Positions 2,641 to 55,484 of a stretch of DNA of 64,000 bases are shown piece after piece. Positions within the stretch are counted from its first letter, which is position 1. Each line of letters starts with the position of its first letter. This DNA comes from Mobula hypostoma. Taxonomy: Eukaryota. Under the pieces are notes generated by a model that saw only the letters and a program-made list of their open reading frames with translations, did not search any database and was not told the origin of the DNA. The translations under genes were made by a program, and so were the position numbers. Location: contig NC_086101.1 in NCBI RefSeq assembly GCF_963921235.1, forward strand, positions 36,704,001-36,768,000. Direction: 5' to 3'.

Positions 2641-2934
2641 ATGCATGCACTACTGCTAAATGTAGCCTACCCATTTTTCAATTCTAGCTTACAACAAGCC
2701 CCAACTGTTCACATCATACTTGCTGCATGAGCCACACAGGCTTCCAGTCCAGTAATGCTTTTATTTAAAAATCTCGTGCTTGTTTTCAAATACTCTTATG
2801 GGTACAGTACACCACACCAAACTCATCTTTATTATTTCCATCAATAGTGTGATTGAATACTCTCCACACCTGGATGGCTGCAGTTCCAGCAACAGTCAAG
2901 AAACTTAATTCATTACAACACAAAGTGGCCCTCC

Positions 2935-3410
2935 AGACTGGCAACCCATCTGCCACTGGCAACTAATCTTCCATTGGTAACCCGTCCGCCACTAGCAACT
3001 CATCTGCCACTGGCAACTAATCTTCTATTGGCAACCCATCCATCACCATCAACACACTCTCTATTGGCAACCCATCCATCACCATCAACACATTCTCTAT
3101 TGGCAACCCATCCATCACCATCAACACATTCTCTATTGGCAACCTATCCATCACCATCAACACATTCTCTATTGGCAACCCATCCATCACCATCAACACA
3201 TTCTCTATTGGTAACCCATCCATCACCATCAACACATTCTCTATTGACAACCCATTCATCACTATCAACACATTCTCTATTGGTAACCCATCCATCACTA
3301 TCAACACATTCTCTATTGGCAACCCATCCATCACCATCAACACATTCTCTATTGGCAACGCATCCATCACCATCAACACATTCTCTATTGATAACCCATC
3401 ACCATGGGCA
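2935..3410. repeat. 36-bp minisatellite, about 10-13 copies
   Basis: Unit ctattggcaacccatccatcaccatcaacacattct, which gives the 12-aa periodicity in ORF 2974..3561. Confidence 0.95.
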
Positions 3411-3544
3411 ACTATATTACTATAAGTTACAGAATAAATATACAGTGCAAAAGACGAATAGCAAAGTAGTGTTCTTGTATTCCTGGACGCTTGGGCCGTT
3501 TAGAAACCTGATGACAGAGCGAAAGACGTTAGAATATAGATCTA

Positions 3545-4160
3545 TAGATGGGAAGAACTAGAATAAAAAAGCAAGGATATAATGGTGAGGCCAATAAGGC
3601 ACTGGTCAGACCACACTTGGAGTTTTGTGATTAGCCTGGGCCCCCTATCTGAGAAAAGATAAGCTGGCATTGGAGAGGGTCCAGAAGAAGTTCACAAGAA
3701 TGATTCCAGGAATGAAAGGGTATGAGGAGCGTCTGAGGCTCTGGGCAGTCTAGAAGACTGAATGGGGACCTCACTGATAACCGTCAAATATTGAAAGGCC
3801 TAAATAGAGTGGAAGAGGAGAAGATGCTTCCTAGAGTAGGGGAGTCCAGGATCAGAGGGCACAGCCTCCGAATAAAGGAATGTCCATTTAGAACAGAGAT
3901 TAGGAGGAATTTCTTTAGCCAGAGAATGGCGAATCTGTGGAATTCATTACTACAGATGGCTGTGGAGGCTGAGTCATTTGGTATGTTTAAAGCAGAGGCT
4001 GATAGATTCTTGCTTATTCGGGGCATCAAAGGTTATGGTGAAAAGGCAGGAGGATGGGATTGAGAGGGATAATAAATCAGTCACGGTGGAATGGTGGTGC
4101 AGACTCCATGGGCCAATTGGCATAATTCTACTCCAATGACTTATGATCTTATGGTCTAAG
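3545..4160 (+). mobile_element. CR1 LINE 3' fragment
   Basis: ESRIRGHSLRIK...FFSQRMANLWNSL in ORF 3791..4063 and a (cttatg)-type tail. Confidence 0.85.
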
Positions 4161-4616
4161 TTGTTCTTAAGTCATTGAGAGGGGGTATTTAGGCTCCTGT
4201 ACCTCTTCCCTGATGGTAGTAACAAGAAGAGGGCATGTCCCAAATGGTGAGGGTCTTTAATGATGGATGACATCTTCTTGAGGCTCCACCTTTTGAAGTG
4301 TTGGTTTTGCTTGTGGTGGAACTGATTGAGTCTACAACCTAATGCAGCCTAATGCAATCCTGGGCATTGGAGTCTCCATACCGGGTGATGCAAAGAGTCA
4401 GGAAGCTATAGGAATTTACAAGAGCCTTTGATGACCTCCCAAATCTCCTCAAATTCCTAATGAAGTAGAGCCACTGGCAAGCCTTCTTCGTGATTGCATC
4501 AATTTGCCCAGAATATTGAGACTCAGAAACTTGAATCTGCTCATCCTTAGTACTGCTGATCTCTCAATGAGGACGTGTATGTTCTCCTGACTGCCTTCCT
4601 GAAGCCCACAATCAAA

Positions 4617-5221
4617 TGGCCACACATTTTAATTCCACATCCCATTCCCATTCTGACATGTCTATCCACGGCCTCCTCTACTGTAAAGATGAAGCCACAC
4701 TCAGGTTGGAGGAACAACACCTTATATTCCGTCTGGGTAGCCTCCAACCTGATGGCATGAACATTGACTTCTCTAACTTCCGCTAATGCCCCAACTCCCC
4801 CTCGTACCCCATCCGTTATTTATTTATATACATACTTCCTTTCTCTCTCTCTCCTTTTTCTCCCTCTGTCCCTCTGACTATACCCCTCGCCCATCCTCTG
4901 GGTTTTTCCCCCCCCTCCCCCTCTTCCTTCTCCCTGGGCCTCCTGTCCCATGATCCTCTCATATCACTTTTGCCAATCACCTGTCCAGCTCTCGGCTCTA
5001 TCCCTCCCCCTCCTGTCTTCTCCTATCATTTTGGATCTCCCCCTCCCCCTCCCACTTTCAAATCCCTTACTCACTCTTCCTTCAGTTAGTCCTGACGAAG
5101 GGTCTCGGCCTGAAACGTCGACTGTACCTCTTCCTAGAGATGCTGCCTGGCCTGTTGCGTTCACCAGCAACTTTGATGTGTGTTGCTTGAATTTCCAGCG
5201 TCTGCAGAATTCCTGGTGTTT
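4617..5221 (+). mobile_element. Penelope-like element, family A: 5'-truncated, ORF C-terminus plus pLTR
   Basis: Translates as ATHFNSTSHSHSDMSIHGLLYCKDEATLRLEEQHLIFRLGSLQPDGMNIDFSNFR*, typical of the PLE GIY-YIG endonuclease C-terminus. It is followed by a pyrimidine-rich pLTR with a hammerhead motif. Confidence 0.85.
5088..5123 (+). ncRNA. Minimal type I hammerhead ribozyme motif
   Basis: agtc-CTGACGA-agggtctcggcct-GAAA-CG-TC-gact. Both catalytic boxes are present, with stem I (agtc/gact), a short stem II and palindromic ACGT in place of stem III. Confidence 0.8.
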
Positions 5222-5404
5222 ATCAATTCCTTGGTCTTGCCAGTATTGAGTACAAGGGTGCTGCTGTGGCATCAGTAAACCAGCAAACCTATCTTACCAC
5301 CTTGGTATGCCACCTTGTTGTAATCTGAGATTCTACCAACAATAGTGATGTCATCGGCAAATTTATAAATTGAATACTTTGCCTGTGAAAATACAAACGT
5401 TTGT

Positions 5405-34635: not shown

Positions 34636-34754
34636 TTACTATGATTATCATATTATCAGAGTAGCAAAATCCTTTGATAAATGCGGAGTTATTATACCAG
34701 TGAAATTTAGGAAGTGGAAGACAATCTCAGTAAACTATATATGAAAAACATCTC

Positions 34755-35280
34755 AAAGTTGCTGGTGAACGCAGCAGGCCAGGCAGCATCTCTAGAAAGA
34801 GGTACAGTCGACGTTTCAGGCCGAGACCCTTCGTCAGGACTAACTGAAGGAAGAGCTAGTAAGAAATTTGAAAGCGGGAGGGGGAGGGGGAGATCCGAAA
34901 TGATAGGAGAAGTCAGGAGGGGGAGGGATGGAGCCAAGAGCTGGACAGGTGATTGGCAAAGGGGATATGAGAGGATCATGGGACAGGAGGTCCGGGGAGA
35001 AAGAAAAGGGGCGGGGGAACCCAGAGGATGGGCAAGGGGTATAGTGAGAGGGACAGAGGGAGAAAAAGGAGAGTGAGAGAAAGAATGTGTGTATAAAAAT
35101 AAATAACGGATGGGGTATGAGGGGGAGGAGGGGCATTAGCGGAAGTTAGAGACTGACGAAGGGTCTCGGCCTGAAACATCGACTGTACCTCTTCCTAGAG
35201 ATGCTGCCTGGCCTGCTGCGTTCACCAGCAACTTTGATGTGTGTTACTTGAATTTCCAGTATCTGCAGACTTCTGTTGTT
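34755..35280. mobile_element. PLE family-A foldback element (inverted long pLTR plus direct short pLTR)
   Basis: 15-bp TSD with one mismatch, tatgaa(a/t)aacatctc (34740-34754 / 35281-35295). Hammerhead motifs at 34806-34841 (-) and 35153-35184 (+). Confidence 0.9.
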
Positions 35281-35639
35281 TATGAATAACATCTCCTGAT
35301 TACCGACAGTAAATGATTTATTGGCTGCTTATTACATCTAATGTTAGCCATGCCTACTATATACCCAATGATCTATCTTCGAGAATCTTTAATTATGGAA
35401 AAAGCAAAGGACTTGGTGGAACTGATAAATAAATGATATCCTCCTGCGCCTCACTGGCGCATCATGAGGCAAACTTGCCTCTTCTTTCACTAACACGAGA
35501 GAATCGTCGGGAAATCCAAACAACACACACGAATGCTGGAGGAACTCAGGAGGCCAGTCAGCATCTATGGAATGCCAGCTCAACACGTCATAGGTGCTGT
35601 CTGGCTTGCTGAGCTCCTCCAGCATTTTGTGTGTGTCGC

Positions 35640-35793
35640 CGTTTCTTTAGCGTTCGTCAGTTTCGCGGGGCCGAGTTGCCAGCTCAACGCTCGACACAGC
35701 ACGGATGGAAAGCACGCAAGGCGCCAGCCATGTTGGAAGCCGGGACCACTTGCCTCGAAGGCCGGGGCACATGCCACTACACCATCAGCAGGC
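35640..35793 (-). mobile_element. tRNA-derived SINE, second family
   Basis: Homologous to 57757-57975 and about 42965-43120 (ggccgagttgctagctcgacgctcaacc…cacggatggaaag), with a tRNA-like head on the minus strand. Confidence 0.7.
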
Positions 35794-36468: not shown

Positions 36469-38347
36469 GAATATAGCCAAGAATATAAAGGAGGATAATA
36501 AAAGCTTCTTTAGGTATGTGAAAAAGAAAAAAATTGTTAAGACCAAAATTGGGCTCTTGAAGACAGAAACGGGTGAATTTATTATGGGGAACAAGGAAAT
36601 AGCAGACGAGTTGAACAGGTACTTTGGATCTGTCTTCACTAGGGAAGACACAAACAATCTCCCAGATGTAATAGTGGCTGGAGGACCTAGGGTAACGGAG
36701 GAACTGAAGGAGATTCACATTAGGCAGAAAATGGTGTTGGATAGACTGATGGGACTGAAAGCTGATAAATCCCTAGGGCCTGATGGTCTGCACCCCAGGG
36801 TACTTAAGGAGGTGGCTCTAGAAATCGTGGACGCATTGGTAATTATTTTCCAATGTTCTATAGATTCAAGATCAGTTCCTGAGGACTGGAGGGTAGCTAA
36901 TGTTATCCCACTTTTTAAGAAAGGAGGGAGAGAGAAAACAGGGAATTATAGACCAGTTAGCCTGACATCAGTGCGGGGGAAGATGCTGGAGTCAATTATA
37001 AAGGATGAAATAGCAGCACATTTTGATAGCAGTAACAGGATCGATCCGAGTCAGCATGGATTTACAAAGGGGAAATCATGCTTGACTAATCTTCTGGAAT
37101 TTTTTGAGAATGTAACTATGAAAATGGGCAAGGGAGAGCCAGTGGATGCAGTGTACCTGGACTTTCAGAAAGCCTTTGATAAAGTCCCACATAGGAGATT
37201 AGTGGGTAAAATTAGGGCACATAGTATTGGGGGCAGAGTACTGACATGGATTGAAAATTGGCTGGCTGACAGAAAACAAAGAGTAGGGATTAACGGGTCC
37301 CTTTCGGAATGGCAGGCGGTGACCAGTGGGGTACCGCAGGGTTCAGTGCTGGGACCGCAGCTGTTTACGATATATATTAATGATTTAGATGAGGGAATTA
37401 AAAGTAACATTAGCAAATTTGCTGATGACACAAAGCTGGGTGGCAGTGTGAAATGTGAGGAGGATTTTATGAGAATGCAGGATGACTTGGACAGGCTGGG
37501 TGAGTGGGCAGATGCATGGCTGATGCAGTTTAATGTGGATAAATGTGAGGTTATCCACTTTGGTGGTAAGAACAGGAAGGCAGATTATTATATAAATGGA
37601 GTCAAGTTAGGAAAAGGGGAAGTACAACGAGATCTAGGTGTTCTTGTACATCAGTCACTGAAAGCAAGCATGCAAGTACAGCAGGCAGTGAAGAAAGCTA
37701 ATGGCATGCTGGCCTTCATAACAAGGGGAATTGAGTATAAGAGCAAAGAGGTCCTTCTGCAGTTGTACAGGGCCCTGGTGAGACCACACCTGGAGTACTG
37801 TGTGCAGTTTTGGTCTCCAAATTTGAGGAAGGACATTCTTGCTAGTGAGGGAGTGCAGTGTAGGTTCACAAGCTTAATTCCCGGGATGGCGGGACTGTCA
37901 TATGTTGAAAGATTGGAGCCACTGGGCTTGTATATTCTGGAATTTAGAAGGCTGAGAGGGGATCTTATTGAAACATATAAGATTATTAAGGGATTGGACA
38001 CGCTGGAGGTAGGAAGCATGTTCCCGCTGATGGGTGAGTCCAGAACCAGAGGCCACAGTTTAAGAATAAGGGGTAGGCCATTTAGAAAGGAGTTGAGGAA
38101 AAACTTTTTCACCCAGAGAGTGGTGGATATATGGAATGCTCTGTCCCAGAAGGCTGTGGAGGCCAAGTCTCTGGATGCTTTCAAGAAAGAGATGGATAGA
38201 GCTGTTAAAGATAGCGGAATCAAAGGTTATGGGGATAAGGCAGGAACTGGATACTGATTGTAGATGATCAGCCATGATCACAGTGAATTGTGGAGCTGGC
38301 TCAAAGGGCCGAATGGCCTACTCCTGCACCTATTGTCTATTGTCTAT
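36469..38347 (+). mobile_element. CR1 LINE of the same family, nested in the host copy
   Basis: Own (ctattgt)n tail; flanked by a tgactg duplication (36463-36468 / 38348-38353). Confidence 0.85.
36518..38257 (+). CDS. CR1 ORF2 fragment: reverse transcriptase plus C-terminal domain, uninterrupted 579 aa, 5'-truncated
   Basis: GPDG, NYRPVSLTS, QHGF, YLDFQKAFDKV, GVPQGSVLGP, FADDTK and RPHLEY motifs. Confidence 0.9.
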   Translation: MKKKKIVKTKIGLLKTETGEFIMGNKEIADELNRYFGSVFTREDTNNLPDVIVAGGPRVTEELKEIHIRQKMVLDRLMGLKADKSLGPDGLHPRVLKEVALEIVDALVIIFQCSIDSRSVPEDWRVANVIPLFKKGGREKTGNYRPVSLTSVRGKMLESIIKDEIAAHFDSSNRIDPSQHGFTKGKSCLTNLLEFFENVTMKMGKGEPVDAVYLDFQKAFDKVPHRRLVGKIRAHSIGGRVLTWIENWLADRKQRVGINGSLSEWQAVTSGVPQGSVLGPQLFTIYINDLDEGIKSNISKFADDTKLGGSVKCEEDFMRMQDDLDRLGEWADAWLMQFNVDKCEVIHFGGKNRKADYYINGVKLGKGEVQRDLGVLVHQSLKASMQVQQAVKKANGMLAFITRGIEYKSKEVLLQLYRALVRPHLEYCVQFWSPNLRKDILASEGVQCRFTSLIPGMAGLSYVERLEPLGLYILEFRRLRGDLIETYKIIKGLDTLEVGSMFPLMGESRTRGHSLRIRGRPFRKELRKNFFTQRVVDIWNALSQKAVEAKSLDAFKKEMDRAVKDSGIKGYGDKAGTGY

Positions 38348-44524: not shown

Positions 44525-44692
44525 TAAACACAAGAGACTCTGCAGATACTGAAATCCTGAGCAACACACACAAAATGCTGGAGGAGCTCAGCCAGCCAAG
44601 CAGCATCTATGGAGGGGAATAAATAGTCGGCGTTTTGGGCCAAGACCTTCAATCAGGACTGATGAAGGGTCTCAGCCCAAGACATCGATTAA
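44525..44692. mobile_element. Degenerate PLE pLTR foldback
   Basis: Inverted pLTR joined to CTGATGAagggtctcagcccaagacatcgat. Confidence 0.7.
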
Positions 44693-46242: not shown

Positions 46243-49200
46243 TCGGAGTGTTGCAATGGAGTATCAGTTTAGCACTTGGTGTTCAATGCAATAGATGGGC
46301 TTCTGAGCCTGCCTTACCTCTTGTCCAGAGACAAGACAGTGGTCCAATAAGTTGCAGCCCAGGATATAGTGCATGGCATTCTGCCACCTTAGATTTAAAC
46401 CTCTCTTCCTTACTTTAAGGGGCAACTAGAAGGGAAGCAGAGAGGTGGGGTAGGGAGAAAGGGAATTTCAATACTGTCCTGAAGAAGAGCCTTGGCCCAA
46501 AACGTCGACTGTTTATTCTTTTCCATAGATGCTGCCATTCCTGCTGAGTTCCTTCAGCATTTTGTCTGTGCTGCTTTAGATTTCCAGTATCTTCAGAATT
46601 TCTTGTGTTCAATACTTGCGTAGGTCCCAGGTCACTGAAGGTACGGACACCACCAGGGCAGGGATTCAAATTAGACGTCCCAACGGGCCGGAGGTCGAAG
46701 AGGGCAGAGACCTTGGACTTGTACGTGGAATGAAAGTCAGTTAAAAGGGATCAACAATGCAGTAAGTATCATGAGAGGCATTTCACTTCTGCTTTGCAAG
46801 AGCTTTCTAGTCCAGAGACCTTGCCTCCTTTGTCACTGACAGAAACTCCCAAACAGTAATCCAATATTTTGAGCAAAAGGAATAAAAACACAAGCAAGGT
46901 TCTGAATCCAAATGATGCAGGGTGTGTTGTCACTGACTGCCGTTGAACAATCCCCTAGTATGATAAAATGGACACATGACTTCACAATTAACCTCGTTAT
47001 GACCTTGTACCTTCATGTCTACCTGGACTGCACGTTCTCTGCGGCTGCTTCACTTTATTCTCTATTGTTTCTCTTTGTTCTACCTCAATGCATTATGTCA
47101 TGATCTGATCTGCATCAACAGTACACAAGGCAAGTTTTTTTACTACACCATGGTTACATGTGACAATAATAAACCAATTTACCAATTAATTTTACTAGTG
47201 AGGCTGGATTGGGGTTAAACATAGTTAACGACACTAGGTTTAGCCCCCCTGTTTACCCTAGAGATAACGAAATGCAATCTATTTAATCTCCATGAGGAAG
47301 GAGGCAAAACTAAAATCTGGTGTCTTCCCTGGAAGACGTTGCCCTTTTCATGGTAGCAGTGCCTCCATGCTGTGATGGGACTGTCAGCCTGGTCTCTACA
47401 GGACTCACAACCTCATCTGGACTCAAGCCACTTTCATTCCACCAGGAAACATTTCTTTTTCAGATTTGACAAAGAAAACAAAGTTGTACTTGAGTGAAGG
47501 AGGTTGAGACACAGAATACAGATTGTGCAGGAAATACTCATTAATTCAGGAGGATCTGTTGGTAAGAAGACCAGCGGGTGTTGCAAACACTCAGCAGGTC
47601 AGGCAGCATCTGTGGAGGGATAAACACAGGTAACATTTTAGGTTAATGATCCTTAAATCTGTTTGACTTTCCTTAGACGTTGCCTGGCATGCTCACCCTA
47701 TAACCATCAGGAAAGCAGAGAATGGGTGGTGGGGAGAAGGGAAAGATGTTCTTAGTGGATGGATCCCATTGTAGATGGCAGAAGTTATGGAGGCTTGTGG
47801 AGTGATAGGTAAGGACAAGGGAAACCCTCTCCCTGTTATGGAAGTGAGATAATGGGCTGAGGGTGGATGTGTGGCAAATGGAGAAAATGTGGGTGAGGGC
47901 AGCATTGATGGCAGTGGAAGAGAAAATCCATTCTTTGAAGGACAAAGGCAGCAAACGCACGACGAACACCACTCCTTGGTAGATGCCCTCCAAAGCACAT
48001 GCCATCCTGACTTGGAAATACTTCACCATTCCTGGCTCAAAATCCTGAAACTCCCTCTCTAAAACCTCATATACCCCACATCTCAAGGACTGCAGCTGTC
48101 CCAAAAGGCGATTCCCTGTCACCTTCTCAAGGGCAAATGGAGATGGGGCAATTAAGTGCCACCTCGCCCTAGGAAAGCACACGTCCCTAGAAAGAATTTT
48201 AAAAATATGTGCTTGCTGAATCCTTAACCCCAAACTAAGTCCGGTGTACAGCAAAGGAGAAATTCAAAGGAGGAAGTGTAGGTTCTCTGACTCTATCTCC
48301 AAACCATCTGCACACATTTTTGCAACCTTTTGAATTTTTGAAATTTTTGAAGAGTTAGTCACGTGTTACTAAGGTGACAACCTTAGAGTAATAACCACGA
48401 TTGCCTATGGTACGTCATTAACATTTACCCTGGTGTTAAAAGACTGCTGGCTCAGCTGACTGGCAGAGATTCCCCTCTGGTGAGTGCAAAAAGTAATGAT
48501 CACACAAATGCACTAACTTTCCAAACGGACAGAAAGGTCGGTGAGAAACAAGCAATGGACTGACCCGTAGCTCCACTGAACCATCAGGGTGAAGGGCTGT
48601 CACATGTTGTCACAAAATTGTAAAACTTGGTACCACCAGCGAGGTCAGCCACGTCTACGTTCCCTCTTCTCGTTACTACCTTCGGGGTGGAGACTGGGAG
48701 CCTGAGGACCCACACTCAACAATTCAGCTTCTTTCCCTATGCCATCAGATTTCTGAATGGTCCATGAATCCACCTGCATGATCCTGCATATCAGAGTTCT
48801 CTTTTGGAACTAGTTGACGATCAGTATTTCTGATCTGGCTATTGTTCACCATTGCACCTAATGAAAATAAACAATATACAGTACTGTGTAATAATGATAA
48901 ACCTGATTCTGATTGGGAAAGAAGATCCCATTTCTTGTTCAGAAAAACGTTCTTCAAATGCAAGTCAGCAAGATAGCATAATGTTATATTACAGTGCGAG
49001 TTGTAAGATTGGGGTTTGATTCTCGCCCTTGTCTGTAGGGAGTTTCCACTGTATGTCCTCCCCCCAGTCATGCGGTTTTCTGTCCACATTCCAAAGACAT
49101 ACGGGTTAGGGTTAGTGAGTTGTGGGTATGCTTTGTTGGTGCTGGAAAACGTGGCAACACTTGTGGCACTCTTTGCTCTTACCGACAAAGCTCATTCAGT

Positions 49201-51226: not shown

Positions 51227-54200
51227 GGAGCATCCGCGATGCTGAGAAAGTCATGAATAGCACATTCAGTGAGTTGGCCACACCGCAGGTAAAGGCTACA
51301 CAGGCAGAAAGGGAATGGGTGGCCACTAAACAGCATAGCAGTAGGCAGGTAGTGCAGGAGTCCCCTGAGGTCATCTCCCTCCTAAACAGATATACTGTTG
51401 GGGGAGATTTCTCATCGGGGAAGGCAGCAGCAGTCGAGTTCATGGCACCATGGGTGGCTCTGTGGCACAGGAGGGAAGGAAAAGGAGTGGGAGAGCTATA
51501 GTGATAGGGGATTCAATTGTAAGGGGAATAGATAGGTGTTTCTGTAGCTGCAAACGAGACTCCAGGAGGGTATATTGCCTCCTTGGTGCAAGGGTCAAGG
51601 ATGTCTCTGAGTGGCTGCAGGACATTCTGGAGTGGGAGGGTGAACAGCCAGTGGTCGTGGTGCACATAGGTACCAAAGATATAGTTAAAAAACGGGATGA
51701 GGTCCTACAAGGTGAATTTAGGGAGTTAGGAGATAAACTAAAAAGTAGGACCACAAAGGTAATAATCTCTGGATTAACTACCAGTGGCACGTGCTAGTCA
51801 CAGGAGGATATATCAGATGAATATGTGGCTTGAAAAATGGTGCAAGGGGGAGGGATTCAAATTTCTGGGGCATTGGAACCAGTTCTGGAGGAGGTGGGAC
51901 CGATACAAACAGGATGGTCTGCACCTGGGCTGGACTGGAACCAATGTCCTAGGGCGAGCGTTTCCTACTGTTGTTCAGGAGGATTTAAACTAATGTGGCA
52001 GGGGGATGGGAACAAGGGCAGAGAGACAGAGGGGTGTAAAATGAGGGTAGAAGCAAAAAGTAGTAAGGTGAAAAGTAAAAGTGGCAGGCCGGCAAATCCA
52101 GGGCAAAAATCAAAAAGGGCCACTTTTCAACATAATTGTATAAGGGCTAAGAGTGTTGTAAAAGCAAGCCTGAAGGCTTTGTGTGTCAATGCAAGGAGCA
52201 TTCGTAACAAGGTGGATGATTTGAATGTGCAGATAGTTATTAATGAATATGATATAGTTGGGATCACAGAGACATGGCTCCAGGGTGACCAAGGATGGGA
52301 GCTCAACATTCAGTTATATTCAATATTCAGGAGGAATAGACATGAAAGAGAAGGAGGTGGGGTGGCATTGCTGGTTAGAGAGGAGATTAACGCAATAGAA
52401 AGGAAGGACATTAGCCAGCAGGATGTGGAATCGATATGGGTAGAGTTGCATAACACTAAGGGGCAGAAAACGCTGGTGGGAGATGTGTACAGGCCACCTA
52501 ACAGTAGTAGTGAGGTTGGGGATGGCATTAAACAGGAAATTAGAAATGCGTGCAATAAAGGAACAGCAGTTATAATGGGAGACTTCAATCTGCATATAGA
52601 TTGGGTGAACCAAATTGGTAAGGGTGCTGAGGAAGAGGATTTCTTGGAATGTATGCAGGATGGTTTTCTGAACCACCATGTCGAGGATCCAACTAGAGAG
52701 CAGGCTATTCTAGACTGGGTATTGAGCAATGAGGAAGGGTTAGTTAGCAATCTTGTCGTGCGAGGCCCCCTGGGTAAGAGTGAACATAATATGGTGGAAT
52801 ACTTCATTAAGATGGAGAGTGATATAGTTAATTCAGAAACAAAGGTTCTGAACTTAAAGAAGGGTAACTTTGAAGGGATGAGACGTGAATTAGCTAAGAT
52901 AGACTGGCAAATGATACTTAAAGGCTCGACGGTAGATATGCAATGGCAAGTATTTAAAGATCGCATGGATGAACTACAACAATTGTTCATCCTAGTCTGG
53001 CAAAAGAATAAACCAGGGAAGGGAGTGCACCCATGACTGACAAGGGAAATTAAGGATAGTATCAATTCCAAAGAAGAAACATACAAATTAGCCAGAAAAA
53101 GCGGCACACCTGAGGACTGGGAGAAATTCAGTCTGGCAGAGGAGGACAAAGGGCTTAATTAGGAAAGAGAAAAAAGATTATGAGAGAAAGCTGGCAGGGA
53201 ACATAAAAACTGAATGTAAAAGCTTTTATAGATATGTGAAAAGAAAAAGTTTGGTTAAGACAAATGTAGGTCCCTTACAGTCAGAAACAGGTGAATTGAT
53301 CATGGGGAACAAGAACATGGCAGACCAATTGAATAACTGCTTTGGTTCTGTCTTCACTAAGGAGGACATAAATAATCTTCTGGAAATAGTAGGGGACCGA
53401 GGGTCCAGTGAGATGGAGGAACTGAGGGAAATACATGTTAGTAGGGAAGTGGTGTTTGGTAAATTGAAGGGATTAAAGGTAGATAAATCCCCAGGGCCAG
53501 ATAGTCTGCATCCCAGAGTGCTTAAGGAAGTAGCCCAAGAAATAGTGGATGCATTCGTGATAATTTTTCAAAACTCTTTAGATCCTGGATTAGTTCCTGA
53601 GGATTGGAGGGTGGCTAATGTAACCCCGCTTTTTAAAAAAGGAGGGCGAGAGAAACCAGGGAATTATAGACCGGTTAGCCTGACATCGGTGGTGGGGAAA
53701 TGCTAGAGTCAGTTATCAAAGATGCGGTAACAGCACATTTGGAAAGTGGTGAAATCATCGGACAAAGTCAGCATGGATTTGTGAAAGGAAGATCATGTCT
53801 GACGAATCTCATAGAATTTTTTGAGGATGTAACTAGTAGAGTGGATAGGGGAAAACCAGTGGATGTGGTATATTTGGATTTTCAAAAGGCTTTTGACAAG
53901 GTCCCACACAGGAGATTAGTGTGCAAACTTAAAGCACACAGTATTGGGGGTATAGTATTGATGTGGATAGAGAACTGGTTGGCAGACAGGAAGCAAAGAG
54001 TGGGAATAAATGGGATCTTTTCAGAATGGCAGGCAGTGACTAGTGGGGTACCGCAAGGCTCAGTGCTGGGACCCCAGTTGTTTACAATATAGATTAACGA
54101 TTTAGACGAGGGAATTAAATGCAGCATCTCCAAGTTTGCGGATGACACGAAGCTGGGCGGCAGTGTTAGCTGTGAGGAGGATGCGAAGAGGATGCAGGGT

Positions 54201-54376
54201 GACTTGGATAGGTTAGGTGCATGGGCAAATTCATGGCAGATGCAATTTAATGTGGGTAAATGTGAGGTTATCCACTTTGGTGGCAAGAATAGGAAAACAG
54301 ATTATTATTTGAATAAACACACATCAAAGTTGCTGGTGAACGCAGCAGGCCAAGCAGCATCTGTAGGAAGAGGCGC

Positions 54377-54412
54377 AGTCGACGTTTCAGGCCGAGACCC
54401 TTCGTCAGGACT
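54377..54412 (-). ncRNA. Minimal type I hammerhead motif (mirror copy)
   Basis: Exact reverse complement of 54468-54503. Confidence 0.8.
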
Positions 54413-54467
54413 AACTGAAGGAAGAGTGAGTAAGGGATTAGATCCCTTACTCACTCTTCCTTCAGTT

Positions 54468-54503
54468 AGTCCTGACGAAGGGTCTCGGCCTGAAACGTCG
54501 ACT
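54468..54503 (+). ncRNA. Minimal type I hammerhead motif
   Basis: agtc-CTGACGA-agggtctcggcct-GAAACGTC-gact. Confidence 0.8.
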
Positions 54504-55484
54504 GCGCCTCTTCCTACAGATGCTGCTTGGCCTGCTGCGTTCACCAGCAACTTTGATGTGTGTTGCTTGAATTTCCAGCATCTGCAGAATTCCTGTTGTT
54601 TATTATTTGAATGGTGGCCGATTAGGAAAAGGGGAGGTGCAATGAGACCTGGGTGTCATTGTACACCAGTCATTGAAACTGGGCATGCAGGTACAGCAGG
54701 CGGTGAAAAAGGCGAATGGTATGCTGGCATTCATAGCAAGAGGATTCGAGTACAGGAGCAGGGAGGTACTACTGCAGTTGTACAAGGCCTTGGTGAGACC
54801 ACACTTGGAGTATTGAGTGCAGTTTTGGTCCCCTAATCTGAGGAAAGACATTCTTGCCATAAAGGGAGTACAAAGAAGGTTCAGTAGATTGATTCCTGGG
54901 ATGGCAGGACTTTCATATGATGAAAGATTGGATCGATTAGGCTTATACTGTCTGGAATTTAGAAGATTGAGGGGGGATCTTATTGAAACGTATAAAATTC
55001 TAAAGGGATTGGACAGGCTAGATGCAGGAAGGTTGTTCCTGATGTTGGGGAAGTCCAGAACGAGGGGTCACAGTTTAAGGATAAAGGGGAAGCCTCTTAG
55101 GACCGAGATGAGGAAAAACTTCTTCACACAGAGAGTGGTGAATCTGTGGAATTCTCTGCCACAGGAAACAGTTGAGGCCAGTTCATTAGCCTATATTTAA
55201 GAGGGAGTTAGATATGGCGCTTGTGGCTAAAGGGATCGGGGGGTATGGAGAGAAGGCAGGTACAGGGTTCTGAGTTGGATGATCAGCTATGATCATACTG
55301 AATGGCGGTGCAGGCTCGAAGGGCCGAATGGCCTACTCCTGCGCCTATCTTCTATGTTTCGATGTTTCTATTACTCTGTACTGCGGTCACAAAAACAACC
55401 AAATTCCATGATGTACTCTACTGTATGTCAGTGACAATAAACCTGATTCTGATTCAGTGCAACTTAGAGGGATGTGAAAGGCTC

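What the first reader, a model, noticed from the sequence alone, without database searches (positions are those of the whole stretch)
54302..54612. 285-bp non-coding mobile hairpin with a hammerhead motif on each strand, freshly inserted with a 13-bp TSD
Seen: a perfect 123-bp inverted repeat with a 3-nt loop and a 35-nt tail, flanked by an exact 13-bp TSD, interrupting the CR1 codons DYYLN|GG. Both arms share substitutions (gcgcag, tgtagg, ccaag) absent from the copies at 5088 and 34806, so the two arms came from one template. It encodes no protein. Established: PLE pLTRs carry minimal hammerheads and PLEs often show inverted 5' pLTRs. Inference: transcription in either direction gives a long dsRNA hairpin that sequesters the ribozyme. 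It could be a by-product of fold-back priming during PLE insertion, or a member of a MITE-like, ribozyme-bearing retro-parasite family.
Basis: partly seen in the sequence, partly recalled or inferred. Interest (0 to 1): 0.8.

Follow-up and report, generated by a model that had tools for sequence, protein, structure and literature searches.

The report
Mini palindromic Penelope retrotransposon insertion
This 285-bp DNA palindrome is a real, very young but dead-on-arrival insertion of the tail end of a Penelope-like jumping gene in a devil-ray genome, built in the head-to-head, one-tailed style already published for this transposon class, so it is sound but ordinary.

Summary
There are two perfect 123-nt inverted arms (54316-54438, 54442-54564), a 3-nt centre and a 35-nt one-sided tail (54565-54599). 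An exact 13-bp direct repeat flanks the insert. It interrupts a dead CR1/L2-type LINE reverse-transcriptase ORF at DYYLN|GG. A paralogous LINE copy at 37184-37984 carries the 13-mer once, which serves as an empty-site proxy.

Arm plus tail is the last 158 nt of a Penelope-like element (PLE). A longer copy at 5062-5219 follows a GIY-YIG-type ORF end. Each arm carries a minimal hammerhead core that Rfam does not detect; it matches the published min-HHR layout except for a G.U at 10.1-11.1.

A second tails-out pair at 34755-35280 has its own 15-bp TSD and a different inner junction (-450/-128, against -158/-158 here). Its tailless arm starts 10 nt upstream of this one's start, inside the same GU run. 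The junction 21-mer is unique in the window.

Inverted 5'-truncated copies, the one-sided 30-40 bp tail, nicking and priming of both strands, two internal RT start sites, and opposite-strand hammerhead pairs are all published. The best reading is a one-off integration by-product, not a MITE-like family. Earlier notes of this scan describe similar palindromes of other sizes elsewhere in this genome. Interest is low.

The parts
54302..54314 (.). Left target-site duplication TTATTATTTGAAT
   Evidence: Exact direct repeat with 54600-54612. It is present once in the paralogous LINE copy at 37585-37597.
54315..54315 (.). Single junction base (A) between the TSD and the inverted arm. It is either untemplated or part of an imperfect microhomology (TTGAAT in the target versus TTGAAT in the tail).
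   Evidence: Alignment A1. The repeat finder extends the arms to 54309 at 98%.
54316..54438 (-). Inverted, tailless arm: element positions -158 to -36, with the sense strand on the minus strand
   Evidence: 100% reverse-complementary to 54442-54564. 95% identical to 5058-5184.
54381..54408 (-). Minimal hammerhead core on the minus strand (CUGACGA...GAAAC GUC)
   Evidence: Pattern scan; annotation.
54439..54441 (.). 3-nt centre (TAG) of the palindrome, the turn-around junction
   Evidence: The junction 21-mer is unique in the window.
54442..54564 (+). Direct arm: element positions -158 to -36
   Evidence: 95.6% identical to 5062-5219 over arm plus tail.
54472..54499 (+). Minimal hammerhead core on the plus strand: AGUC CUGACGA A GGGU-CUCG-GCCU GAAA C GUC|GACU
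   Evidence: The layout follows Cervera & de la Pena 2014 (PMC4209133).
54565..54599 (+). 35-nt one-sided 'tail', the last 35 nt of the element, present only on the direct arm
   Evidence: Alignment A1. It matches the published 30-40 bp PLE tail (PMC8557442; PMC11167929).
54600..54612 (.). Right target-site duplication
53775..54314 (+). Host: a dead CR1/L2-type LINE reverse-transcriptase ORF, left of the insertion (in-frame stop at 54090-92)
   Evidence: RVT_1 4.3e-14 and 3.9e-4; translation.
54613..55300 (+). Host LINE ORF continuing right of the insertion in the same frame once the insert is removed. It has further in-frame stops.
   Evidence: 81% identical to the paralogue at 37585-37984.
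4571..5219 (+). Reference copy of the same PLE family: ORF remnant ending ...FRLGSLQPDGMNIDFSNFR* at 4783, CT-rich 3' UTR, hammerhead at 5092, tail at 5185-5219. It has no inverted arm.
   Evidence: Relatives of the ORF end carry YIDD and GIY-YIG motifs.
34740..35295 (.). Second tails-out inverted pair of the same family. The inverted arm is 34755-35152 (about -450 to -45) and the direct arm plus tail is 35153-35280 (-128 to the end). The 15-bp TSD TATGAA[A/T]AACATCTC lies at 34740-54 and 35281-95.
37585..37597 (+). Empty-site proxy: a single copy of the target 13-mer (TTATTATATAAAT) in a paralogous LINE copy

Best explanation
The feature is one very recent, extremely 5'-truncated insertion of the 3' end (pLTR segment) of a Penelope-like retroelement into a dead LINE copy. 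It is laid down in the class-typical head-to-head ('tails-out') inverted form.

Inferred mechanism: the PLE ribonucleoprotein nicked both strands of an AT-rich target 9-13 bp apart. The bottom-strand 3' OH primed reverse transcription at the terminal start site, so the direct arm keeps the 35-nt tail. The arm attached to the top-strand 3' OH begins at the second, internal start site 35 nt upstream, inside a GU run (GAUGUGUGUU), so it lacks the tail. Synthesis turned round 158 nt from the element's end, either by snap-back self-priming or by a template jump between the two nascent cDNAs. That turn gave two arms copied from one template and a 3-nt centre. Gap filling then produced the TSD.

The product has no ORF and holds one sense hammerhead per strand. 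It is a by-product with no function of its own. If it were transcribed, it would fold into a 123-bp RNA hairpin that locks up the ribozyme.

Shown here: the anatomy, the single TSD, the empty-site proxy, PLE parentage, arms from a single source, and a different junction in the sister insertion. Inferred from the literature: nicking and priming of both strands and the two start sites. Inferred only: the turn-around step.
For: - **Anatomy and TSD:**
- **Empty-site proxy and restored LINE frame:**
- **Homology:** arm plus tail equals the last 158 nt of the copy at 5062-5219, which follows an ORF end. Database relatives of that ORF end carry YIDD plus GIY-YIG.
- **Single source:** the arms are identical and share 4 private substitutions.
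- **Sister insertion:** the pair at 34755-35280 has its own 15-bp TSD. Its tailless arm starts within 10 nt of the same internal site, but its inner junction differs.
- **Unique junction:** the junction 21-mer occurs once in the window.
- **Published class features:** an adjacent inverted 5'-truncated copy and a 30-40 bp tail at one end (PMC8557442); a 31-bp tail on one inverted pLTR and junction palindromes read as self-priming (PMC3846280); PLE protein that cleaves and extends both strands, starts RT at two internal sites with the tail between them, and prefers AT-rich targets (PMC11167929); dual min-HHRs 100-700 bp apart on opposite strands (PMC4209133).
Against: - The exactly symmetric junction, with both arms ending at -158, is not predicted by two independent primings. 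It needs either a turn-around step or a template with a defined 5' end, and neither was shown.
- Only three family copies lie in the window, so 'unique junction' is tested on a very small sample. The genome could not be searched.
- The published in vitro work used a lizard PLE whose start sites lie in an AC-rich RNA stem-loop. Here the RNA is GU-rich at that site.
Confidence: 0.85

Rival explanations
1. The feature is a member of a propagating, non-autonomous, MITE-like or retrozyme-like family. Either the 285-bp hairpin or a defined 158-nt pLTR transcript (for example one started at a pLTR promoter) is repeatedly copied by PLE reverse transcriptase in trans, so many copies share the same junction.
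For: The arm plus tail keeps the 3' end and both presumed RT start sites. PLE pLTR sequences can mobilise foreign inserts in trans (PMC3846280). Non-LTR retrozymes are thought to be PLE-dependent (bioRxiv 10.64898/2026.07.22.740005). An earlier scan note lists three ~220-bp palindromes of similar size (unchecked).
Against: The junction is unique in the window. The sister pair has another junction. Scan notes describe sizes from 146 bp to 3 kb. Each transcript would carry only one sense hammerhead, so no ribozyme-delimited unit can be released. A 123-bp perfect hairpin (-269.7 kcal/mol) would be a poor RT template.
Confidence: 0.07
2. The feature results from two independent 5'-truncated PLE insertions in opposite orientation, one landing beside or inside the other.
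For: PLEs are abundant here, and PLE protein can target its own pLTR (PMC11167929). At 35519-35688 a 12-bp direct repeat flanks only one arm of a small hairpin, which may be such a case.
Against: A single TSD encloses both arms, and the paralogue shows one undivided target. The arms are 100% identical with 4 shared private substitutions and end at the same nucleotide.
Confidence: 0.03
3. The feature is an assembly or sequencing artefact, such as a fold-back chimeric read, or a post-insertion inverted duplication.
For: Perfect palindromes with tiny spacers are a known artefact class and are unstable in vivo. PLE repeats are reported to trouble assemblies (PMC8557442).
Against: The asymmetric 35-nt tail, the exact TSD and the precise LINE empty site are what a biological PLE insertion predicts, not what a read chimera predicts. 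An older sister pair with the same architecture has accumulated mutations.
Confidence: 0.03

Closest known systems
Penelope-like element (PLE) insertions with an inverted 5'-truncated copy and a one-sided 30-40 bp tail (Evgen'ev & Arkhipova 2005; Arkhipova et al. 2013, PMC3846280; Craig et al. 2021, PMC8557442)
   Same: Head-to-head inverted arms, one TSD around the whole unit, a tail on one end only (35 nt here), a hammerhead in the pLTR segment, an AT-rich target and strong 5' truncation.
   Different: This is an extreme miniature. It has no ORF and no direct pLTR pair, only 158 + 123 nt, and a perfectly symmetric junction with a 3-nt centre.
In vitro PLE integration by the Anolis Poseidon protein (Frangieh et al. 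2024, PMC11167929)
   Same: Both target strands are nicked and extended. There are two RT start sites one tail-length apart, and the cleavage sites are AT-rich. Together these predict one tailed and one tailless arm.
   Different: The family and start-site sequence differ (GU-rich RNA here). The turn-around that joins the arms was not studied in vitro.
Minimal hammerhead ribozymes of metazoan PLEs (Cervera & de la Pena 2014, PMC4209133)
   Same: CUGANGA and GAAA boxes, an extra nucleotide after A9, no helix III, a palindromic ACGU at 15.1-16.1, and a 4-bp helix I. Dual motifs on opposite strands 100-700 bp apart were already reported.
   Different: G10.1.U11.1 wobble instead of G-C. Diverged copies suggest CpG decay of an ancestral CCCGAAAC. 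Activity is untested.
L1 twin priming (Ostertag & Kazazian 2001; from my own knowledge)
   Same: The top-strand 3' OH primes a second cDNA, giving a 5'-inverted / 3'-direct insertion within one TSD.
   Different: Twin priming inverts a more 5' segment with little overlap. Here the inverted arm fully duplicates the direct arm and starts at a fixed internal site.
Non-LTR retrozymes (Cervera & de la Pena 2020, PMC7229834; Li et al. 2026 preprint)
   Same: Short, non-coding, hammerhead-bearing and PLE-related.
   Different: Retrozymes are direct tandem repeats whose same-sense hammerheads release a unit. This element has inverted arms and one sense hammerhead per transcript.

Membership tests
Penelope-like element insertion | Sequence derived from an element encoding a PLE-type RT plus a GIY-YIG endonuclease | tested here: met
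   Arm plus tail is 95.6% identical to 5062-5219, which lies 3' of an ORF remnant ending at 4783. phmmer relatives of that ORF end are P0003 (YIDD ... LLYIGET) and P0006/P0147 (Pfam GIY-YIG E~2e-3, below the gathering score). The window copy itself is degenerate and gives no Pfam hit.
Penelope-like element insertion | Inverted 5'-truncated copy adjacent to the direct copy, head-to-head | tested here: met
   Arms 54316-54438 (-) and 54442-54564 (+), with the 5' ends at the centre.
Penelope-like element insertion | 30-40 bp 'tail' present at one end only | tested here: met
   A 35-nt tail at 54565-54599 on the direct arm only. The sister pair has the same asymmetry, with its tailless arm starting 45 nt from the end.
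Penelope-like element insertion | Target-site duplication of variable length around the whole unit; AT-rich target | tested here: met
   13-bp (9-13) TSD TTATTATTTGAAT; a single copy in the paralogue; 15-bp TSD in the sister pair.
Minimal hammerhead ribozyme (min-HHR) of PLEs | Conserved core boxes CUGANGA and GAAA, and a cleavage triplet | tested here: met
   CUGACGA ... GAAA C GUC on both strands.
Minimal hammerhead ribozyme (min-HHR) of PLEs | [quoted passage not shown] | tested here: met
   Extra A after CUGACGA; ACGU palindrome; AGUC/GACU helix I. Features as listed in PMC4209133.
Minimal hammerhead ribozyme (min-HHR) of PLEs | G10.1-C11.1 base pair | tested here: not met
   Position 11.1 is U (GGCCU|GAAA), giving a G.U wobble in all copies of the young family. 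Diverged copies have CCC|AAAA instead.
Minimal hammerhead ribozyme (min-HHR) of PLEs | Self-cleavage | not testable with these tools
   Published PLE min-HHRs cleave poorly, and only as dimers or with protein (PMC4209133; PMC11167929).
Rfam hammerhead families | Match to a curated hammerhead covariance model | tested here: not met
   No hammerhead hit at gathering score or at E<10 on the hairpin or on a single copy. This is expected for motifs that lack helix III.
Non-LTR retrozyme | Direct tandem repeats with same-sense hammerheads flanking a unit | tested here: not met
   The two motifs lie on opposite strands, and there is no tandem structure.
MITE-like or propagating non-autonomous family | Multiple copies with identical internal structure and junction at different sites | tested here: inconclusive
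   There is one copy in the 64-kb window, and the sister pair has a different junction. The genome itself could not be searched with the tools available.
L1-type twin priming | Inverted segment comes from RNA 5' of the direct segment, with little overlap | tested here: not met
   The inverted arm duplicates the direct arm completely, -158 to -36 in both.

The most novel reading that the evidence does not exclude
The perfectly symmetric mini-palindromes may not be random accidents. They could be recurrent products of a defined short pLTR RNA or of an obligatory snap-back step. Once transcribed, for example from host genes or LINEs, they would act as hairpin-RNA genes that feed small-RNA silencing of the parent Penelope family.
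Probability: 0.06. Interest if true: 0.5.

Novelty: new member of a known kind. Interest (0 to 1): 0.18.

Why it matters
The element is a clean, mutation-free natural example of the PLE integration product. It has one TSD, one tail, a tailless arm that starts at the internal initiation site, and a 3-nt turn-around. It could therefore help test models of the still unresolved second half of PLE integration. By itself it adds no new kind of element or mechanism. For annotation, such hairpins should be labelled as truncated PLE insertions, not as MITEs, miRNA precursors or new ribozyme elements; Rfam miRNA models give spurious sub-threshold hits here.

Tried and rejected
- **Rfam.** The scans found no hammerhead family. 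They gave only sub-threshold miRNA-hairpin and PrrB/RsmZ matches caused by the palindrome, which I rejected as spurious.
- **Pfam.** The window's own PLE ORF remnant gave nothing, so I confirmed parentage through relatives found by phmmer. Several of those relatives are chimeric gene models (a GPCR, RecQ5-like, NYAP) that merely contain a PLE fragment.
- **Protein search for other junction copies.** I searched the protein collection with the 81-aa mechanical ORF that spans the junction. It returned only a one-arm match in a Mobula hypostoma Tim8A isoform. That collection is not a six-frame genome, so this says nothing about copy number.
- **Consensus fold of the tail region.** RNAalifold gave only a weak structure with no compensatory changes. 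I make no claim of a conserved initiation stem-loop.
- **Dimer energy.** My hand-written dimer constraint for the hammerhead was malformed. No dimer energy is claimed.
- **TSD of the copy at 5219.** An alignment gave only a gapped, weak match, so this remains unsettled.
- **ORFs at 58.4-63.2 kb.** These are other LINE reverse transcriptases, not the parent PLE.

Full report
**Observation**

- The repeat finder gives inverted arms 54309-54438 / 54442-54571 with 3 nt between them, and the exact direct repeat TTATTATTTGAAT at 54302-14 and 54600-12.
- The perfect core is 123 nt per arm (54316-54438 and 54442-54564) with 0 mismatches and 6 CpGs per arm, all intact.
- The direct arm runs on into a 35-nt tail (54565-54599) that the inverted arm lacks.

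**Is the insertion real?**

Deleting 54315-54612 gives one continuous reading frame...FNVGKCEVIHFGGKNRKTDYYLN|GGRLGKGEVQ..., in a LINE reverse transcriptase. That LINE copy has several other in-frame stops, so it is dead. Its flank hits Pfam RVT_1 at 4.3e-14.

A paralogous LINE copy at 37184-37984 (about 82% identical) aligns to both flanks. The two alignments overlap by exactly 13 nt at 37585-37597, where the paralogue has the target once (TTATTATATAAAT). This acts as an empty-site proxy and makes chance or artefact very unlikely.

One refinement applies. All three family copies end in ...GTTTAT. The first four bases of the repeat may therefore belong to the element, and the duplication is 9-13 bp.

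**What was inserted?**

The arm plus tail is 95.6% identical to 5062-5219. That copy sits at the 3' end of a longer fragment:
- an ORF remnant ending ...EEQHLIFRLGSLQPDGMNIDFSNFR* at 4783;
- a CT-rich 3' UTR;
- the hammerhead-like motif at 5092;
- the same 35-nt end.

The remnant itself has no Pfam hit. A phmmer search of 1.84 billion proteins found 178 relatives. Among them, P0003 carries YIDD followed by ...GVVYCVRC..LLYIGET. P0006 and P0147 give weak GIY-YIG hits just N-terminal of the matched stretch. This is the RT plus C-terminal GIY-YIG layout of canonical Penelope-like elements (PLEs).

The best named relative of the arm's mechanical translation comes from Mobula hypostoma. That agrees with earlier scan notes calling this a devil-ray genome.

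**Hammerhead**

No Rfam hammerhead model matches, either at gathering score or at E<10. The hairpin draws only spurious sub-threshold miRNA matches.

By pattern and by hand, each arm reads AGUC CUGACGA A GGGU-CUCG-GCCU GAAA C GUC|GACU. This is the min-HHR layout of Cervera & de la Pena 2014:
- both core boxes are present;
- there is an extra base after A9;
- there is no helix III;
- ACGU forms a palindrome at 15.1-16.1;
- helix I is 4 bp.

The one departure is U at 11.1, giving a G.U wobble instead of G10.1-C11.1. Diverged copies in the window read CCCAAAAC where this family reads CCUGAAAC. That pattern fits CpG decay of an ancestral CCCGAAAC. Cleavage is untested. Published PLE min-HHRs cleave poorly and need dimers or protein.

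**One template**

The two arms are identical. They share four substitutions (TA>CG, G>C, C>T) that are absent from the copies at 5062, 35153 and 34745 (alignment A1). Strictly, though, it shows a single source sequence, not necessarily a single RNA molecule.

**Family or one-off?**

The junction 21-mer occurs once.

The only other inverted pair of this family, 34755-35280, has these features:
- its own 15-bp TSD (TATGAA[A/T]AACATCTC, one mismatch);
- a tail on the direct arm only;
- a tailless arm that starts within 10 nt of the same internal position;
- a different inner junction, with the inverted arm reaching about -450 and the direct arm starting at -128.

Its arms differ at 5 of 93 overlapping positions, so it is older. 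The copy at 5062-5219 has no inverted arm at all.

Earlier, mostly unchecked notes of this scan list Penelope palindromes of 146 bp, ~220 bp, 857 bp, 1 kb, 1.5 kb, 2.2 kb and 3 kb in this genome, with 11-15 bp TSDs and a one-sided ~36-nt tail. Two follow-up agents judged them to be published-type PLE products. All of this points to one-off products with variable breakpoints. The sample I could test myself is three copies.

**Mechanism**

The published record covers most of the anatomy.
- Craig et al. 2021 describe frequent 5' truncation, an inverted 5'-truncated copy adjacent to the unit, and a 30-40 bp tail often present at one end only.
- Arkhipova et al. 2013 describe a 31-bp tail on one of the inverted pLTRs. 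[quoted passage not shown]
- Frangieh et al. 2024 show in vitro that a PLE protein cleaves and extends both target strands and prefers AT-rich sites. It starts reverse transcription at two internal sites, and the sequence between them is the tail.
- Cervera & de la Pena already saw dual min-HHRs 100-700 bp apart on opposite strands.

Applied here, the steps would be as follows.
1. Staggered nicks are made 9-13 bp apart in TTATTATTTGAAT.
2. The bottom-strand end primes at the terminal site, giving the tailed direct arm.
3. The arm joined to the top-strand end begins 35 nt upstream, inside GAUGUGUGUU, giving the tailless inverted arm.
4. The two are joined at -158.

Independent primings do not explain why both arms end at the same nucleotide. 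A snap-back of the nascent cDNA, or a jump from one cDNA end to the other, would explain it. So would a template whose 5' end lay at -158. That step is inference only. The breakpoint lies at the edge of the CT-rich tract, which may or may not matter.

**Consequences**

A transcript of either strand folds into a 123-bp perfect hairpin, at -269.7 kcal/mol against -39.4 for a single arm plus tail. Each transcript also holds only one sense hammerhead, so no ribozyme-bounded unit can be released. This separates the element from retrozymes. Nothing here shows transcription, small RNAs or any function.

**Verdict**

The 'by-product of PLE insertion' reading is supported, and the 'MITE-like retro-parasite' reading is not. 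The kind of structure and most of its mechanism are already published. This is a particularly small and pristine example in a ray genome. Interest is low (0.18).

Noticed in passing
window 35519-35688: There is a small hairpin from a diverged PLE family: arms 35532-35569 / 35589-35626 at 87%, with a 19-nt spacer, truncated before the hammerhead. The right arm carries a tail. A 12-bp exact direct repeat TGCCAGCTCAAC (35573-84, 35677-88) flanks only the right arm, which suggests a second insertion beside an older inverted copy rather than one event.
   Followed up: partly
window 44539-44688 and 46476-46608: Two diverged (~74%) PLE 3' ends lie tails-out 1.8 kb apart, and both carry tails. Their hammerhead core reads CCCAAAAC (G12>A) where the young family reads CCUGAAAC, a pattern expected from CpG decay of CCCGAAAC on either strand. 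44648-44688 also forms a short extra palindrome centred on the hammerhead box.
   Followed up: partly
protein P0151 (Mobula hypostoma Tim8 A isoform X2, NCBI): The annotated isoform contains ...CWKFKQHTSKLLVNAAGQAASIGRGAVDVSGRDPSSGLTEGRES... This stretch is 91% identical to the antisense translation of this PLE 3' end, tail included. A PLE fragment has either been exonised or been swept into a gene model.
   Followed up: partly
window 54514-54525 / 54576-54587: A 12-nt inverted repeat CTACAGATGCTG / CAGCATCTGCAG pairs the region upstream of the internal start site with the tail. The core AGAUGCUG/CAGYAUCU is kept in seven copies of several families, but no compensatory change was seen, so a structural role is unproven.
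   Followed up: partly
window 35133-35160: At the junction of the second inverted pair, the end of the inverted arm reads ...GGAAGTTAGAGA|CTGACGA, while the element normally reads ...TCAGTTAGTC|CTGACGA. This is a 6-nt AGTTAG microhomology close to the join, which could mark a template switch or could be chance.
   Followed up: no
window 4497-4525 vs 5220-5249: The direct-only PLE copy ending at 5219 may have a long imperfect TSD (CAATT..TGCCAG.ATATTGAG). The alignment is gapped and weak.
   Followed up: partly
window ~2900-3560: A tandem repeat of about 36 nt translates as repeated ...HPSPSTHSLLAT... units in one frame. It lies between LINE fragments.
   Followed up: no
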